NCBI GenBank assembly: GCA_965285935.1
Contig: OZ260664.1
Location: forward strand, 76,322,001-76,386,000
Origin: Ophelia neglecta
Taxonomy: Eukaryota
DNA length: 64,000 nt
Direction of reading: 5' to 3'
The position numbers and the translations under genes were made by a program. The notes under the pieces are model-generated. The model ran no database searches. It saw only the letters and a program-made list of their open reading frames with translations, and was not told the origin of the DNA. Below are positions 13 to 20,281 of the stretch, in pieces; position 1 is the stretch's first letter; every line of letters begins with the position of its first letter.

Positions 13-3000
13 TTTAGTGTCTAGGAATGTGTCTTTTGGCTTCCCAGCAATGTTAAAAGATCCCTTATAAAGAGCTGGCTGAGATGGCCGACTGGCATCA
101 GACTGGCGTATGGCCTGCCAATATGGGGACTCCTCTGCCCTGTAAACATAAATGTATGTAAATAAATTAGCGATTGGACTACAAATTGGTGCAATTGACC
201 TTTCATACATGCTCATCTCTTGTTTGAATGACATGTGTGTAACAAATTTCTTTAGTCATCACCGCAAATAAAATGCCACAAAGAGGCGGAGCTTATCTGG
301 ATATTTCAAATAATCTAGAATATTCTGGAATAAATGAGACAGATATCTGCATTGGATCAGCTGACATCTACAACAATATTCTTGTTTATTAGTCTGTAGC
401 CATATGAGATTCTATTGCATGCTATTAATCAGTGAAGTATGCAGTTTGTTCATTAGGTGGAATAGTACGGAGCCTATTTTAGGCTGTCCTTTCAATAATG
501 TGTTATGCAGTACTGTTGTTACCCAGAAAAAGCAAAATTTGGCACTATATGCACCAAATTAGATCCTTAAGAACGAAAAACCAGTTCATATAACATTTAG
601 ACAAAGCTGCTAAAATCTAATGTGAGAATTGCTACTGTCAAACATGATATTTTCACTGTATCAATTTTCACAACACAGGCACTTGTGGCATGTTATTTTC
701 TTGAAAAGTAAAAAGAGGTATTGGAAGTAAATGGTGTATGAAATGCGAAAATTAAGTGCATGCAAATGGGTCATGTTCCACAGTTTAATGTAGTGAAGGC
801 CATAATCATGACATTAACCTCTCTACTTAACATAATTAACAGCATGTTTATAATAAACATATGATTTCAGAGGTCAAGCTTATTACCTATTGATAAATTT
901 CTCTTTGAACTGAAGAGAAAATATTTCCCAGTTAGAAATCAGGGAGCCATCTACCATCACAGACTTAGCCTTCAGCCCTGAAAACATACAGCAGTTTAAT
1001 AGAAAAATTCACTGAGAACAGGCTCAATCTTTAAATGACAAGCAGCTGATATATCATCATAAAACTTCTGGATTTTACCTTTTCTTTGTTCATTCAGCAC
1101 ATTGCTACCAAAACCAGCATAGTTGACTCTTCCAAGATTCTCAACAAGTATGTCCAAAACATTTTCTTGCTGGAAAAAAAATAATTTAGTCAATATAAAT
1201 CGTCAAATGCTGCCCGTACAAAAACAAAACACCTATTAATGCTAATGATTTTTAGCCTTTTCATTCAAAAATACCCAGCCAATAAAGACCCCTAAATGCT
1301 TGCAAACTGCTCCTTTTAATCTTTGCATCTGCACTACTGCCTTGATTGGAAGTAGAGTAAAGACAAGATAACAATGCCCGAGGCCCTTTTTTATTGAGGT
1401 TATCAAAATGTGACATATTGTGTTGTCTTGTTCCTAGAGTCATATGTGACATTTACAAGCAATAAACTACATTCCTTTAATTAAATGTGTTTCAAATCTG
1501 CCCACCTTCCAGTTTACATGGCTGTTTTGGTAGGTCAGTGTCCTGTTTACTCCACTCCAGTCAACAGTGTGAGTTTCAACACCATTCACCAAAATCTGAA
1601 ATAGGAAAACACAGTGGAACTCTAAACTTTCCATACACTTGTAAATGGTCCCATTTAATATAATTCTTTTGCACAAGGAAAAATATCATGGCAATGAAAA
1701 TATGCAGCAACGTACCGATGCTCTATCTCTCACAGATCCTATGATTTTGATTTTTTTGAAATGACCTAGTCCTTTCTTTCGGTACAGAATGAAGCCATAG
1801 CCTTGGCCTCCTCCATTGTTGATATCCAGCATTTCCATGGGAAGAAGGTCAGGATAGTTCATTGGCTTAACAGATGAGAATAACACAAACTTATACCGGT
1901 TAAGACAAGAATCAAGCCAACACAAAATACCAGGTAAATTAAGATAAAGCCATGTATTCTAGTTGATGGGAATATTATCTATGGCAGTCTTTTATTTAAG
2001 TTTTTAATATAATATTGTTAACTGACCTTTAAGATTGACAACAAATCTTCAAAATTTAGAAAATGGTTAAACTGAACCATGCCATAGGCAAATGAAGGCA
2101 ATGAAGGCAGTGGATCTGGCAATTCTACAAGTATAAAATATAGTTGGATATCATTCATTCATTATTTTCTATAATTGTCTTCATACATATACATGTGTAT
2201 ATCTTGATACAGAAGCAAGGGATTTTGTTTTGTTAAAAGGTGCCAACTTAAGATTTTAAAAATAGTTGCTGATCTTCATGTACATGCTGTTTTTCACTAG
2301 TACTTGAACTGTTCATCGAATTAAATACCACTACCCCTTGAAAATTTTCATTAGTACAGTCTAATTAGATTCTTATCAGGAAAAAGACCTTAAAAAAAAT
2401 TCAGATAATACAGTCACCAACCTTTTGGCCTTAGCATATAATTTGGAATCATGTTTCGAATGACAGTAAACTTAGCCGTTATTTCTCCACTTTCAGACAG
2501 CGGCGCATTGTAATCTGTATCCAATCACAAAAAAAAAAGTTAAGAGAGCCAATTTATTTGTACACTCATCATAGAAGAATTATTAATCAAATAATGTTAA
2601 TTTTAAATGACTGCTAAGCTGATACACTTTTTAAAACACACATGTACAGCAAACTACTTCTACTGGTCTACTTAATGTACATACATCTGTCTACAGTATT
2701 AAATAGAAGCTAAGTGTATTTAAAGCCCCTCCTATTTATAGTAAAGAACACAATTTAAAGAGTTTGGTCACATTTTATTTTATATGGACTAGGGATTCAG
2801 TATTGTCAATTATCTGTATCTGACCTACCATAGCTGGTTATTGTGGGAGCGTATGGTGCATCATTAGCCCCATTCATAAAGCCAAAGTTAGTTCCTCCAT
2901 GAAACATATAGAAGTTGACAGAAGCATCAGCATCCAATATGAACCTCAGAGATTTCCGGAACTCTGAAACATTCCAACACCTGTGCAACAGTCATTTCCA

Positions 3001-17060: not shown

Positions 17061-18285
17061 ATGGTTAGTTTTTTTAATGACAATTCCGTCGGATAGCCAT
17101 CTGTGGAACGGATATGTAAAAAATCATTCGTCCTCATTCCTGTGTTGTTTGAACGCTGGTGACAACCCAAGATAACAGTTGGACCGCCAATGAAAAACAC
17201 TGAATGACACACCTTAATATCAAAGCCGTAGCTCATGACCCACATGTCAGCAGTGGAAGCAACACATTTATACTTTTGTGCGTGTAGTCAAGGCGACACG
17301 TTATTACTTATCTTTTTCAGCTGTCAAAAAAAGAAACCTAGGCAAATTTTGTGATTAGTTGTAGTCGTTCTAAATCTGCAATCGGTCTCAGTTCGGTGAT
17401 TTAAGGTTTTGTACAGTACTATTATATATAAATATTTACTGATGTTAAATAACAAAGTTTGAATAAAAGCTGCAAGTCTTTTTTGAATCCGCCACTGATA
17501 ATGTATTATGCACACCAAACCCATATATAATAAAAGCTTCTGCAAGAAAATATAATGGCAATTAAAAAAAAACCATATAGCAGACACTAATATTGCATTT
17601 GGTTACCTTGATTGTCATGCATGAGTTAATGTATTGGTAGTTTTAACTCGCGTTTTACCACTTTCTCTACCGAACAGAAATGATAGGTTTTTTCAGCACA
17701 CACAAAAACAACCTTTGAACATGTTGGAGCTAAACTTTATTTGTCTGAATTCACACTGGTTAAGAGAGCCAATAGATGGAATTTGAACGCGAATGTAGAA
17801 CCAATCTATTGTAGGCAATGGACATTTAAAAGTGGCATGTTTTAGTTTGAATAAAGAAGATAAATACAAGAACAAGTTAAACAAAATTGGCACACGTGTA
17901 AGATTTACCTTACATAATACATATTATTAAGAACTCACTGGAACTAACCAGGTTGCAGCGAGATTGGGACTCCAATAGCATAGCAGTTAGTAATAGCTAT
18001 TGGTAGCAGCGCCCCAATTCATGTAAGCAAATAAATAAGTCTATCAGTTCCTGGTTGGGTATATAGCAACAGGGAAGTCGAGCTAGCTGTTACTTTCAAG
18101 TGCAACACCGCATTTGATATTTTTTCGTTTTCAATGTGGCGAGTGACATTTCAAATAAACAACTTACACATGCTACAGGCTATATGCTTCTTAAACTTTC
18201 GACACAATTGCAAAAAAAACCATGCGGCATTAATGACATTCAGAAGAACTTACGATTTGTTATGAAAAGTCCTAACGTAGTGGTT

Positions 18286-18355
18286 CTTTTGAAGTAAAAT
18301 CAGTCTGCCTTCTGTGCAAGTAAGCACTTTTGAGGACAAACATCATCAGCAAAAG
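18286..18355 (-). promoter_or_regulatory. Type II SECIS element in the selenoprotein 3'UTR
   Basis: Minus strand: cttttg-ctg-ATGAt-gtttgtcctc-AAAA-gtgc-ttactt-gcac-a-gaaggcagac-TGAt-tttactt-caaaag. Helix I is cttttg/caaaag; the core is AUGA.../...UGA (non-Watson-Crick); helix II pairs 9 of 10 positions; unpaired AA; apical mini-stem gtgc/gcac. About 575 nt downstream of the TAG stop. Confidence 0.9.
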
Positions 18356-18769
18356 GCCAGCCACATTTCGTTGGTTGAAAATGCCTAATACCAAACGGTT
18401 CATAATGCACCATAAAATGAAAGTACAAATCTACCCTAAATATTGACAAACATATTACCTTGAATCAATTCTAAAATTATTAGTAAAACAAAGGTCGATA
18501 TGGCTAAGAGTTATATAGCTTAATTTATGTTTTATTTAATGGCAGTGATGAATGTTAATTGATAAGTATCTTAATCAATTTAATTTAAAAATAATAGGAA
18601 AAACAAGACCCAGGAAAATAATTTCATACGTATGTGATTTGACGGGTTACAGAAAAATAATGCAACTAACGGTGCCATATAGATGTGAACAGAATCTCCA
18701 GAAATAATTGACACTCGCGAAAAAGATGGCATATGATTACATATCCTAGAGGCAGTTCATTTGTGCTCA

Positions 18770-18800
18770 ATGTAATCATAAGGAATCCTTATGATTACAT
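18770..18800. repeat. Perfect 15-bp inverted repeat (1-nt spacer) in the selenoprotein 3'UTR
   Basis: atgtaatcataagga-a-tccttatgattacat; a third partial copy (tatgattacat) at 18732-18742. Confidence 0.85.
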
Positions 18801-18929
18801 ACACCACATAATATGACTGACGATAGGATGCGTGGGTGTGAACCAATTATGAATATATACTACCAGTGCTTTTTAACAGTGCCTATCACTGGTGTGTTTA
18901 ATGAAGTTGAATCTTTGCTTTAGATGTAA

Positions 18930-20281
18930 CTATAGGATGAGACACAGCCTCGAGGACTTCTGAGGTTTCATTTTGTCCAGTTCTTCTGATACTAAATTAA
19001 CTAACTGAAATGTGAAGGCATAACAAGAATTATGGAGAGTGTATGCTGATAAAAAGACTCTCAGTTCCGAAACAATGTACGAGCAAACACTAACGTGTTC
19101 CAAAATAAACACATAATCCTCACATTGGTTCAAGCTGAAGAAGCTATATTAAAAAAAAAAGAAACTACCAATACTGGTAGATATCGTTTTTATTCCGGAG
19201 AATTAAAATATCCAGAATTTGAAAACAACACTTTTCCCGTGTGCTCGGAAAGATTGTTTTAAATAAATTAAACATATTACACATTCAAATATCAATCACA
19301 ATGTTTCCGAAAACATCATAGATATAAAGCAAATATTTTTACGATTTTAAATCGGGTTTTGGGTGAAAATAGTGATTCCTGTATTCGTACGAATCATGAC
19401 TCTTTTGGTTTATGGAGAAAGTAGAATATGTATGCATTTACCTTATCTTCGGAAGGAAGTTGGCCAAGAAGGTTGCTTTCGAGTTGTGAATAAACCAAGA
19501 TTCCATTAACAAACACTTCAAACGAATCTACGAAGTAATGTACAAAATTAATGAAACAGATTCTGACTTATAGATTGTTAGCTATATTGAAATAAATGGC
19601 CCAAGGTTTAATCTAGTGATGAGAAACTGAGGTGGTATATAATTAGAAAATCATTGAGTATGCTAAAGAAGGTCAAAGTAAGCAAGCTTTTAAACCATTA
19701 CCTCTTTCTCCATATGAACCACTGATATCACCATTGGGAAAATGCTCCATAGAATATATCTTGAAAGCGGTGAACTTCGTCCCGAATGATGGTCATAGAT
19801 ATCTAAAACCAAAGTTAAGATTATTTGCATCAAGTAGCATTCGGCAAACAAGAAGTGTATTGCTTCGCTGTGTAGATATAGCAGAACCCGACAACCCCAT
19901 TATTTCCCATATTCAATTATCAATATTCGCCTTCTCAACATGTTAAGGATTAGGCCTATATGCGCCATCGGGCGACCATCCAGGGTTTGGTTTGATCACC
20001 TGGGCGTGAACAGTGTAAATATAATAACATCTTTCTATAAGTGGTCTCAAACAGTCACTTTTTGCAATAAAGAAAACGTGCTTCAAATAATATATTTCTA
20101 GTTGGCGACATCTGGATCAAAATCAACATATTCATATAGAACAGTACGGCCTAGTCATAATATTCTTGTTTTCGAACATCAACACTTACCAGTATTCAAC
20201 ATGTATCGTGACTTGGCGGATATCCCTGCTACGAACACCTCGCTGACTATGTATACTATGTATGCTCTCTCCGAGCTCCAT
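18930..20281 (-). CDS. MIEN1: MIEN1/SelW2-like Rdx-family selenoprotein, 117 aa, predicted U-Y-L-U motif and C-terminal CaaX (CLIL)
   Basis: Exons 20281-20190 (MELGESIHSIHSQRGVRSRDIRQVTIHVEY+TG|gtaagt), 19802-19702 (ttttag|A TAT CTA TGA CCA...: U-YL-U-PSFGTKFTAFKIYSMEHFPNGDISGSYGER), 19527-19442 (DSFEVFVNGILVYSQLESNLLGQLPSEDK), 19004-18930 (LVNLVSEELDKMKPQKSSRLCLIL*). Matches the Rdx pattern VEYCxxC...P...G..G.FEI.VNG.LV.S.L....P and the MIEN1-type CaaX end. A SECIS lies downstream. Confidence 0.88.

What the first reader, a model, noticed from the sequence alone, without database searches (positions are those of the whole stretch)
18286..18355. Canonical type II SECIS supports genuine Sec recoding
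The AUGA/UGA core, 10-position helix II, AA bulge, GUGC/GCAC mini-stem and 6-bp helix I are all present on the gene's strand in the last exon's 3'UTR. I found only one SECIS, so a single element would have to serve two UGAs three codons apart, which is mechanistically demanding.
Basis: partly seen in the sequence, partly recalled or inferred. Interest (0 to 1): 0.75.

Follow-up and report, generated by a model that had tools for sequence, protein, structure and literature searches.

The report
Selenocysteine insertion hairpin behind a two-UGA gene
An RNA hairpin with every hallmark of the signal that lets animal ribosomes read UGA as selenocysteine lies just downstream of a small redox-protein gene with two in-frame UGAs, so the gene is probably a real but fairly ordinary selenoprotein gene.

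Summary
On the minus strand at 18355-18286 there is helix I (CUUUUG/CAAAAG), an AUGA...UGA core, a 10-position helix II with one C.A mismatch, unpaired AAAA, a GUGC/GCAC mini-stem and a 6-nt loop. It lies 574 nt after the TAG of a four-exon SelW/MIEN1-like gene with a U-x-x-U motif.

A strict pattern scan finds this one site in the window. Random sequences of the same size give 0.0067 full matches (criteria chosen after seeing it).

Rfam SECIS_1 gives no hit. It also misses 3 of 10 SECIS-like elements behind other selenoprotein genes of this genome, and only 1 of 10 reaches its cut-off.

A covariance model built from 12 other SECIS cores of this genome ranks the candidate first in the window: 17.4 bits, E 0.15 for the window and 0.0029 for 17700-18930. 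That is above three held-out elements.

The genome has tRNA-Sec and many UGA-bearing GPx and deiodinase genes.

Not shown: that the mRNA reaches the element (no RNA data), conservation, or activity.

One SECIS serving two nearby UGAs is known from SelL, so it is not unusual. Verdict: a new member of a known kind. The scan had already noted the gene (s1-733617).

The parts
18286..18355 (-). Whole SECIS-like stem-loop (type II), 70 nt
   Evidence: Sequence read. The fold centroid equals the SECIS shape. It is the only strict-pattern hit in the window and the top hit of own-genome model R2 at 18349-18295, 17.4 bits.
18350..18355 (-). Helix I, 5' strand CUUUUG. It pairs with 18291-18286.
   Evidence: RNAfold extends it outward with more pairs (GUGG/CCAC region).
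18343..18346 (-). Core AUGA, followed by U18342. This is the 5' half of the non-Watson-Crick quartet. It overlaps a UGAUGA run.
   Evidence: It fits the UGAN / KGAW core given in PMC3753652 (passage read).
18332..18341 (-). Helix II, 5' strand GUUUGUCCUC
   Evidence: 9 of 10 positions pair with 18312-18303, with one C.A and no bulge.
18328..18331 (-). Unpaired AAAA, 11 nt after the core
   Evidence: The same distance in the comparison elements of this genome is 10-14 nt.
18314..18327 (-). Helix III mini-stem GUGC/GCAC with the 6-nt apical loop UUACUU
18303..18312 (-). Helix II, 3' strand GAAGGCAGAC
18300..18302 (-). U-GA, the 3' half of the quartet, followed by U18299 (KGAW = UGAU)
18286..18291 (-). 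Helix I, 3' strand CAAAAG, after an 8-nt internal loop UUUUACUU (18299-18292)
18356..18929 (-). Presumed 3'UTR between the stop codon and the element (574 nt). It holds AUUAAA/AAUAAA hexamers at 18902, 18584, 18540 and 18536.
   Evidence: Transcript extent is not shown by any data.
18930..19004 (-). Exon 4, ending ...SRLCLIL then TAG (18932-18930)
19442..19527 (-). Exon 3
   Evidence: Canonical AG/GU borders. Weak Pfam Rdx match, E 0.061, 14 bits against a cut-off of 22.6.
19702..19802 (-). Exon 2. Its first base completes UGA no. 1 (UG|A across intron 1). UGA no. 2 is at 19795-19793.
   Evidence: The codons read UG|A UAU CUA UGA CCA.
20190..20281 (-). Exon 1, from ATG at 20281 to ...VEY plus UG, with donor GUAAGU
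17736..17741 (-). First AAUAAA hexamer downstream of the element (545 nt after it). It is a possible poly(A) signal of a transcript that includes the element.
   Evidence: sequence only

Best explanation
The 70-nt hairpin at 18355-18286 (minus strand) is most likely a working type II SECIS element in the 3'UTR of the four-exon SelW2/MIEN1-like gene at 20281-18930.

Inferred mechanism, by analogy with established eukaryotic Sec decoding:
- The AUGA/UGA sheared G.A pairs form a kink-turn that binds SBP2.
- SBP2 recruits eEFSec carrying Sec-tRNA(Sec).
- This complex lets ribosomes read both in-frame UGAs as selenocysteine. They are codons 31 and 34, about 844 and 835 nt upstream in the spliced mRNA.
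- The product has a U-x-x-U redox motif.
- One element serves both codons because a SECIS acts repeatedly in cis.

Shown here: the sequence and the fold, its rarity by chance, its position and strand, its recognition by a model of this genome's other SECIS elements, and the presence of tRNA-Sec and of many other UGA-plus-SECIS genes.

Inferred, not shown: inclusion in the mature mRNA, protein binding, and actual Sec insertion.
For: - Anatomy is complete and in register. The core fits UGAN/KGAW as defined in PMC3753652.
- The strict pattern hits once in 128 kb searched, against 0.0067 expected for the full pattern.
- Model R2 was built from 12 SECIS cores of other genes of this genome, with the candidate left out. 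The candidate is R2's best hit in the window at 17.4 bits, with the next hit at 12.2.
- Three held-out elements score lower: 15.2, 14.6 and 14.3 bits.
- In 28 further loci (92,031 bases), all 10 hits of 14 bits or more lie downstream and on the strand of a selenoprotein-family exon (with coordinates).
- Geometry and energies fall inside the range of 15 comparison elements.
- The upstream gene has canonical splice sites, an open frame apart from the two UGAs, and no other stop.
- The genome has tRNA-Sec(TCA) at 77.9 bits, 16 of 17 deiodinase matches with exactly one in-frame TGA (one of the 16 also has a TAG), and 4 GPx exons with one TGA.
- Precedents: a single SECIS serves the two close Sec of SelL (PMC3316567), and two-Sec SelW proteins have been predicted.
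Against: - Rfam SECIS_1 gives no hit: not at the gathering score, and not at E up to 10 on 1,231 nt or on 130 nt. Meanwhile 7 of 10 comparison elements score 19.3-35.7 bits with it.
- The R2 E-value for the whole window is only 0.15, and R2's calibration is short, so E-values are rough.
- No RNA evidence. No listed run is on record as RNA and the laid runs are genomic contigs.
- Four poly(A)-like hexamers precede the element.
- No orthologue or paralogue was available to test conservation or covariation.
- Gene family membership is weak when tested exon by exon. Only exon 3 touches Pfam Rdx, below its cut-off, and there are no PDB matches.
- Helix II is rich in A-U and G.U pairs and has a C.A mismatch.
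Confidence: 0.78

Rival explanations
1. It is a genuine SECIS, but only part of the transcripts carry it. Cleavage at one of the upstream poly(A)-like hexamers (18902, 18584, 18540/18536) would give short mRNAs that terminate at the first UGA. Only a long 3'UTR isoform, perhaps ending after the AAUAAA at 17741, would make the selenoprotein.
For: Four hexamers lie between the stop codon and the element, and the first one downstream is 545 nt after it. No transcript data exist to exclude this.
Against: The window is 64% A+T, so such hexamers are expected by chance at about this density (my estimate, not a computed control). No cleavage-site evidence of any kind was found.
Confidence: 0.1
2. It is a chance hairpin. 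The SECIS-like motifs are fortuitous, the element has no recoding activity, and the upstream gene is truncated at its first UGA or is a decaying pseudogene.
For: There is no Rfam SECIS_1 hit. The R2 E-value for the window is 0.15. The fold z-score is only -2.0. No expression or conservation data exist.
Against: The full pattern is expected 0.0067 times per window, and about a hundredfold less in the 1.2 kb behind the one gene that needs it. The R2 score is above all non-SECIS hits seen in 156 kb searched on both strands. The three exons after the UGAs keep frame, splice sites and an open reading frame to a CaaX-like end, which a gene truncated at codon 31 would not be expected to keep.
Confidence: 0.09
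3. It is a box C/D-type small RNA or other kink-turn RNA. UGAUGA (18348-18343) and CUGA (18303-18300) would act as boxes C and D closed by the terminal stem, binding a 15.5K/SNU13-type protein rather than SBP2.
For: Weak Rfam matches to SNORD35 (14.6 bits) and snR79 (14.1 bits) use exactly these boxes. Both RNA classes share tandem G.A pairs (my own knowledge).
Against: The scores are far below the families' cut-offs of 36 and 55 bits. The base before UGAUGA is C, not a purine. Eight unpaired nucleotides separate CUGA from the terminal stem, whereas the box C/D kink-turn has the stem directly beside box D (my own knowledge). The space between the boxes is filled by a continuous 10-position helix plus mini-stem, in the register of the second UGA, which leaves no single-stranded guide region.
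Confidence: 0.03

Closest known systems
Eukaryotic SECIS element, type II (form 2), as modelled by Rfam RF00031 SECIS_1 and SECISearch3
   Same: It has helix I, an internal loop, an AUGA/GA quartet (UGAN/KGAW), a helix II of about 10 bp, unpaired A's 11 nt after the core, and an extra mini-helix with a small apical loop. It lies in the 3' region of a gene with in-frame UGA.
   Different: It does not score with Rfam SECIS_1 at E up to 10. Helix I and helix II are unusually rich in A-U and G.U pairs. The core sits in a UGAUGA run. The 3' internal loop is 8 nt.
SECIS of a deiodinase gene of the same genome (L060, G000:C9:51290248-51290378)
   Same: The geometry is nearly identical: AUGA, 11 nt, AAAA, a mini-stem (4 bp in the ungapped read; up to 6 bp in the RNAfold fold), a small loop, then UGA. 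The upper-stem energy is -12.7 against -12.0 kcal/mol.
   Different: That element scores 28.1 bits with Rfam SECIS_1 but 14.3 with R2. The candidate gets no Rfam hit but 17.4 with R2. There is no sequence similarity beyond the motifs.
Selenoprotein L (U-x-x-U, single SECIS)
   Same: Two Sec residues two positions apart are decoded with one SECIS (PMC3316567, passage read).
   Different: It is a different protein family (peroxiredoxin-like, my own knowledge). Here the fold is SelW/Rdx-like. The primary SelL paper was not held.
SELENOW2 / MIEN1 (Rdx12) subfamily; two-Sec SelW of amphioxus and Ostreococcus
   Same: It is a small Rdx-type protein with the redox motif straight after the first strand. 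A U-x-x-U form was reported in amphioxus and in an alga (PMC7539508 and PMC3473315, passages read). Invertebrate members fall in the SELENOW2 branch (PMC13134290, passage read).
   Different: Family membership could only be tested exon by exon (exon 3: Rdx E 0.061). The C-terminal CLIL box recalls MIEN1 (my own knowledge), which that paper dates to jawed vertebrates.

Membership tests
Eukaryotic SECIS element | Core quartet with tandem G.A/A.G pairs, sequence UGAN on the 5' side and KGAW on the 3' side (PMC3753652) | tested here: met
   5' A-UGA-U at 18346-18342 and 3' U-GA-U at 18302-18299. The definition was read.
Eukaryotic SECIS element | Conserved unpaired adenines in the apical loop or bulge at a fixed distance from the core | tested here: met
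   AAAA at 18331-18328 is unpaired in the MFE and the centroid, 11 nt after AUGA. In 14 of the 15 comparison elements of this genome the distance is 10-14 nt; the script found none for the remaining one.
Eukaryotic SECIS element | Helix II of constrained length with little bending | tested here: met
   10 positions, 9 paired, no bulge on either strand. SECISearch3's numeric limits are in a supplement that I could not see.
Eukaryotic SECIS element | Helix I closing an internal loop below the core | tested here: met
   6 bp CUUUUG/CAAAAG with loops of 3 and 8 nt, extended by further pairs in the 90-nt fold.
Eukaryotic SECIS element | Type II: an additional helix (helix III) after the conserved A's | tested here: met
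   GUGC/GCAC with the 6-nt loop.
Eukaryotic SECIS element | Match to the curated covariance model (Rfam RF00031, gathering score 35 bits) | tested here: not met
   No SECIS_1 hit at gathering or at E up to 10. Control: 7 of 10 comparison elements hit, and only 1 of 10 reaches 35 bits. Three of those 10 had themselves been picked by this model. The whole genome gave 3 hits from 129 scored candidates.
Eukaryotic SECIS element | Match to a model of undoubted SECIS elements of the same organism | tested here: met
   R2 has 12 training cores without the candidate, 13 base pairs, and does not model helix I. The candidate scores 17.4 bits and ranks first in the window: E 0.15, or 0.0029 on 17700-18930. 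Held-out elements score 14.3-15.2. The E-values are rough because calibration was short.
Eukaryotic SECIS element | Located in the 3'UTR of an mRNA with in-frame UGA, beyond the minimal spacing (51-111 nt, PMC3753652) | tested here: inconclusive
   By coordinates it is 574 nt after the stop codon on the coding strand, and 844 and 835 nt from the two UGAs.
Eukaryotic SECIS element | Conservation with compensatory changes in orthologues | not testable with these tools
   The genome has no relatives in the collection (text). There is no paralogue of the gene or the element and no protein homologue in the length range.
Eukaryotic SECIS element | Binds SBP2 and supports Sec insertion | not testable with these tools
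   This needs a bench assay.
Rdx family (SelW / SELENOW2 / MIEN1), host gene | Match to Pfam PF10262 above its cut-off, with the redox motif after the first beta strand | tested here: inconclusive
The exons were searched apart. Exon 3 gives E 0.061 and 14 bits against a cut-off of 22.6; exons 1, 2 and 4 give no hit. The motif VEY-U-YL-U-PSFG is read from the sequence.
Box C/D small nucleolar RNA | Box C RUGAUGA and box D CUGA directly flanked by a short terminal stem, and a match to a family model | tested here: not met
   UGAUGA and CUGA are present, but they are preceded by C, 8 nt separate box D from the stem, and the interior is fully helical. The best Rfam snoRNA scores are 14.6 and 14.1 bits against cut-offs of 36 and 55.

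The most novel reading that the evidence does not exclude
A lophotrochozoan-type invertebrate independently turned the Cys of the SELENOW2/MIEN1 C-x-x-U motif into a second Sec. It decodes both UGAs with one A-U-rich type II SECIS about 840 nt downstream. The first UGA is split by an intron (UG|A) and both lie far upstream of the last exon junction. The result would be a diselenide-forming, CaaX-tailed (possibly prenylated) Rdx protein whose mRNA should be unusually sensitive to selenium supply through nonsense-mediated decay.
Probability: 0.4. Interest if true: 0.4.

Novelty: new member of a known kind. Interest (0 to 1): 0.3.

Why it matters
The hairpin is the one piece of sequence evidence that turns 'a small gene with two premature stops' into 'a selenoprotein gene'. 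With it, standard annotation, which would truncate or drop this gene, can be corrected.

It adds one more case of two closely spaced Sec codons served by a single SECIS, this time in the SelW/MIEN1 group. Such cases are useful for studying how efficiently consecutive UGAs are redefined. It does not change the known mechanism.

The work also shows in practice that Rfam SECIS_1 at its curated cut-off recovers only a small part of this genome's SECIS elements (1 of 10 tested). A blank from that model should therefore not be read as absence.

Tried and rejected
1. Rfam on the window at gathering, on 17700-18930 and on 130 nt: no SECIS hit. Only weak miRNA, snoRNA and other matches far below their cut-offs, which I rejected as identifications.

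2. Rfam RF00031 on the whole genome: 3 hits. This was too insensitive to serve as a census.

3. A contiguous TGA-x-x-TGA scan missed the gene, because the first UGA is split by intron 1. The exon model was then read by eye and fixed by coordinates.

4. RNA evidence: the look-up of sequencing runs listed 3 runs of one sample and one study, none on record as RNA. Read laying showed single genomic contigs spanning the introns, no joints, and no difference inside 18286-18355. The three substitutions (17720, 18152, 18822) and three indels (17742, 19232, 20072) nearby are too few to say anything about constraint. These runs may be the assembly's own source.

5. Homologues:
- The search for homologous proteins with the 57-aa open frame around exon 3: no candidate.
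- PDB phmmer with exons 2 and 3: nothing.
- Own-genome searches with exon 3, exon 2 and the element's DNA: self only.
- So no conservation or covariation test was possible.

6. MAFFT alignments A1, A2, A4 and A5 of SECIS elements were structurally inconsistent and were not used. A3 served only to work out the columns.

7. Model R1, from 4 elements (A6), was overfitted. Its seeds scored 52-62 bits and other real elements 8-20. I used it only to make the structure-aware alignment A9 for R2. Alignment A8 held 5 spurious rows and was dropped.

8. My two home-made scanners gave many doubtful hits on the comparison loci. Only hits that also lay downstream of a family exon were kept. In one search the automatic choice of the 3' GA was wrong for at least L056, L057 and L059, so their energies there are not comparable.

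9. A look for C/U-x-x-U exons in the chromosome-5 Rdx cluster loci found nothing convincing.

10. Papers: the primary SelL paper and the mollusc SELENOP paper were not held, so I cite them only through passages of papers that I read. Three supplements could bear on the numeric limits and on prior two-Sec SelW cases, and I did not see them: the SECISearch3 filter limits, the amphioxus SelW figure of PMC3473315, and figure S7 of PMC7539508. SECISearch3 itself is not available here.

11. The spliced protein was never joined, searched or folded. Exons were searched apart.

Full report
WHAT IS THERE. On the minus strand at 18355-18286 the sequence reads, 5' to 3':
- CUUUUG (helix I)
- CUG
- AUGA
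- U
- GUUUGUCCUC (helix II)
- AAAA
- GUGC, UUACUU, GCAC (mini-stem and apical loop)
- A
- GAAGGCAGAC (helix II return)
- U, GA
- UUUUACUU
- CAAAAG (helix I return)

These were read. RNAfold of a 90-nt stretch gives -24 kcal/mol. Its centroid is exactly this shape, with helix I extended outward. The z-score is -2.0, and 5 of 200 shuffles fold as well.

THE GENE IT FOLLOWS. I rebuilt the gene from the sequence.
- Exon 1 runs from 20281 to 20190 and ends ...VEY plus UG, with donor GUAAGU.
- Exon 2 runs from 19802 to 19702. Its first base completes UGA no. 1, and UGA no. 2 follows at 19795-19793, so the frame reads VEY-U-YL-U-PSFG.
- Exon 3 runs from 19527 to 19442.
- Exon 4 runs from 19004 to 18930 and ends SRLCLIL before TAG.
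- All borders are GU..AG. The coding length is 354 nt (117 codons plus the stop). No stop other than the two UGAs interrupts the frame.

The exons were searched apart. Only exon 3 touches Pfam Rdx, at E 0.061 and 14 bits, below the 22.6-bit cut-off. PDB searches with exons 2 and 3 gave nothing. The gene and the hairpin are each single-copy in the 762-Mb assembly.

The hairpin starts 574 nt after the stop codon. Its core lies 844 and 835 nt from the two UGAs in the spliced message. That is well beyond the 51-111 nt minimal spacing quoted in PMC3753652 (passage read).

IS IT MORE THAN CHANCE. I scanned for a strict ungapped pattern: ATGA, then 10-13 nt, then AA, then a GA placed so that helix II has at most one mismatch. 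It hits once on both strands of the window, at this site. In 300 first-order Markov sequences of the same size and dinucleotide make-up, the mean number of hits was:
- 0.33 for core plus helix II
- 0.03 with a mini-stem as well
- 0.0067 with helix I too (2 of 300 sequences had a full match)

I wrote the criteria after seeing the candidate, so they flatter it. Restricting the space to the 1.2 kb behind the one gene that needs a SECIS lowers the expectation about a hundredfold.

MODEL TESTS. The curated Rfam model SECIS_1 gives no hit:
- at the gathering score on the whole window
- at E up to 10 on 17700-18930
- at E up to 10 on 130 nt

To judge its weight I collected SECIS-like elements that lie downstream, on the coding strand, of exons of known selenoprotein families in the same genome. 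These were GPx exons with an in-frame TGA, deiodinase ORFs with one TGA, Sep15/SelM and Rdx-family exons. They were found by Rfam or by my scanners.

On 131-nt pieces of 10 such elements plus the candidate, SECIS_1 scored 7 of 10, at 19.3 to 35.7 bits. It reached its 35-bit cut-off for 1 of 10. It missed three, all from the chromosome-5 Rdx cluster. Three of the 10 had themselves been picked by this model, so among the 7 independent ones it found 4. On the whole genome it reported 3 hits. A blank from this model is therefore weak evidence here, though the candidate does score lower with it than most comparison elements.

I then built a model from this genome's own elements. Four elements of equal geometry gave R1, which was overfitted. 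I used R1 only to align 12 elements structurally (A9). From A9 I built R2, with 52 positions and 13 base pairs, covering the core, helix II and the mini-stem. Helix I is not modelled and the candidate is not included.

With filters off, R2 puts the candidate first in the window at 17.4 bits and E 0.15. The next hit scores 12.2 bits. R2's calibration is short, so these E-values may be off several-fold.

Held-out elements score 15.2 (Rdx cluster), 14.6 (deiodinase, chromosome 7) and 14.3 (deiodinase, chromosome 9). Training members score 23.8-51.7. In 28 further loci (92,031 bases), all 10 hits of 14 bits or more lie downstream and on the strand of the family exon. The rest score 13.1 bits or less (with positions checked). 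Six of those 10 are paralogues of training members, so they are not fully independent. The four deiodinase hits are independent except for one related training element.

A feature table places the candidate inside the range of the 15 comparison elements:
- Core-to-AA distance: 11 nt, range 10-14.
- Upper-stem energy: -12.0 kcal/mol, range -4.2 to -14.5.
- Whole-element energy: -15.7 kcal/mol, range -8.4 to -22.3.
- Helix I: 6 bp.

For at least three rows of that table my script chose the wrong 3' GA. Taken together, the element behaves like this organism's other SECIS elements.

DOES THE ORGANISM DECODE SEC. Yes.
- A tRNA-Sec gene scores 77.9 bits against a cut-off of 47, and ARAGORN calls it tRNA-SeC with anticodon TCA.
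- 16 of 17 deiodinase-like matches carry exactly one in-frame TGA; one of the 16 also has a TAG inside the match.
- 4 GPx exons carry one TGA.
- Many of these genes have a SECIS-like element behind them.

WHAT IS NOT SHOWN. No RNA data were available. The three runs found are one sample of one study, none on record as RNA. When laid, they are single genomic contigs that cover the introns, with no joints. They may be the assembly's own source. They show no difference inside the element, but with only six differences in 2.7 kb that says nothing.

Four AAUAAA/AUUAAA hexamers lie between the stop codon and the element (18902, 18584, 18540, 18536). The first one downstream is at 17741. In 64% A+T sequence such hexamers are common, so this neither supports nor excludes short isoforms that lack the SECIS.

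No orthologue could be reached (the collection holds no related genome), so covariation is untested.

THE 'DEMANDING' POINT. A SECIS acts in cis on any in-frame UGA far enough upstream, and several precedents exist.
- PMC3316567 states that the two Sec of SelL, two residues apart, are inserted with a single SECIS (passage read).
- PMC13134290 summarises evidence that SELENOP SECIS elements support processive insertion at many UGAs (passage read).
- Two-Sec (U-x-x-U) SelW proteins were predicted in amphioxus and Ostreococcus (PMC7539508 and PMC3473315, passages read).
- PMC13134290 also places all invertebrate members of the SELENOW2/MIEN1 group in the SELENOW2 branch.

So neither the arrangement nor the protein type is new. 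What is new is this member and its SECIS. My searches for the exact combination found no paper describing a U-x-x-U member with a CaaX-like tail. They cover only the held open-access library.

RIVALS. There are three.
- A chance hairpin (about 0.09). This fits the Rfam blank and the modest z-score. It fits poorly with the pattern statistics, the R2 rank, and the intact downstream exons.
- A genuine SECIS carried by only some transcripts (about 0.1). This cannot be tested here.
- A box C/D-type kink-turn RNA (about 0.03). It is suggested by the UGAUGA and CUGA runs and by weak SNORD35 and snR79 matches at 14.6 and 14.1 bits against cut-offs of 36 and 55. Against it: the long helix is in the register of the second UGA, 8 nt separate CUGA from the stem, and there is no single-stranded guide region. 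What I know of the box C/D fold is from my own knowledge, not from a call.

VERDICT. It is a new member of a known kind and of modest interest. It is useful mainly for correct annotation and as another natural two-UGA, one-SECIS case.

Noticed in passing
G000:C5:16.6-19.0 Mb (loci L004-L013, L015): Eleven of the 12 Pfam Rdx exon matches in the genome lie in one stretch of chromosome 5. Nine of these loci carry a similar SECIS-like element with AAA(A) in an open apical loop, about 1.2-1.4 kb downstream on the same strand. This looks like a tandem expansion of SelW-like selenoprotein genes. Rfam SECIS_1 misses the three tested. I did not find the Sec-bearing exons.
   Followed up: partly
G000: C9:51.29-51.31 Mb, C7:11.1-14.7 Mb, C2:82.36 Mb, C12:25.49-25.52 and 48.17 Mb, C8:44.43 Mb, C1:141.35 Mb, C5:79.42 Mb, C17:0.24 Mb: There are 17 deiodinase-like matches, mostly single open frames, and 16 of them have exactly one in-frame TGA. 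This is a large, partly tandem deiodinase expansion. Several have SECIS-like elements downstream.
   Followed up: partly
G000:C12:32.66-32.69 Mb (L017, L020, L021, L022): Four clustered GPx genes have a C-terminal exon without a TGA. Each is followed by a closely similar type II SECIS-like element. The Sec exon must lie outside the pieces fetched.
   Followed up: partly
window 18743-18829: An inverted repeat of about 87 nt lies in the presumed 3'UTR upstream of the SECIS, with near-perfect arms around GUAAUCAUAAGGA/UCCUUAUGAUUAC. It gave a weak, meaningless miRNA-family match (20.9 bits against a cut-off of 96.2). It could be a transposon remnant or a regulatory hairpin.
   Followed up: no
window 17742: Two of the three DNA runs carry a 7-base insertion right beside the AAUAAA hexamer at 17741-17736 (minus strand). 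That hexamer is the first poly(A)-like signal downstream of the SECIS.
   Followed up: no
G000:C2:9.29-9.60 Mb: More than 40 hits of about 81 nt to the tRNA-Sec model, at 39-44 bits and below its cut-off, lie in a dense array. This is probably a tandem array of a long-variable-arm tRNA, not tRNA-Sec. The true tRNA-Sec is at C9:47360617-47360702.
   Followed up: no
window 2758-2991 (minus strand): An open stretch reads ...[13 protein letters not shown]..., which looks like an exon of a glycoside hydrolase or beta-galactosidase-type gene (my recollection of the motif, untested). Its TGA-x-x-TGA further on is probably intron sequence.
   Followed up: no
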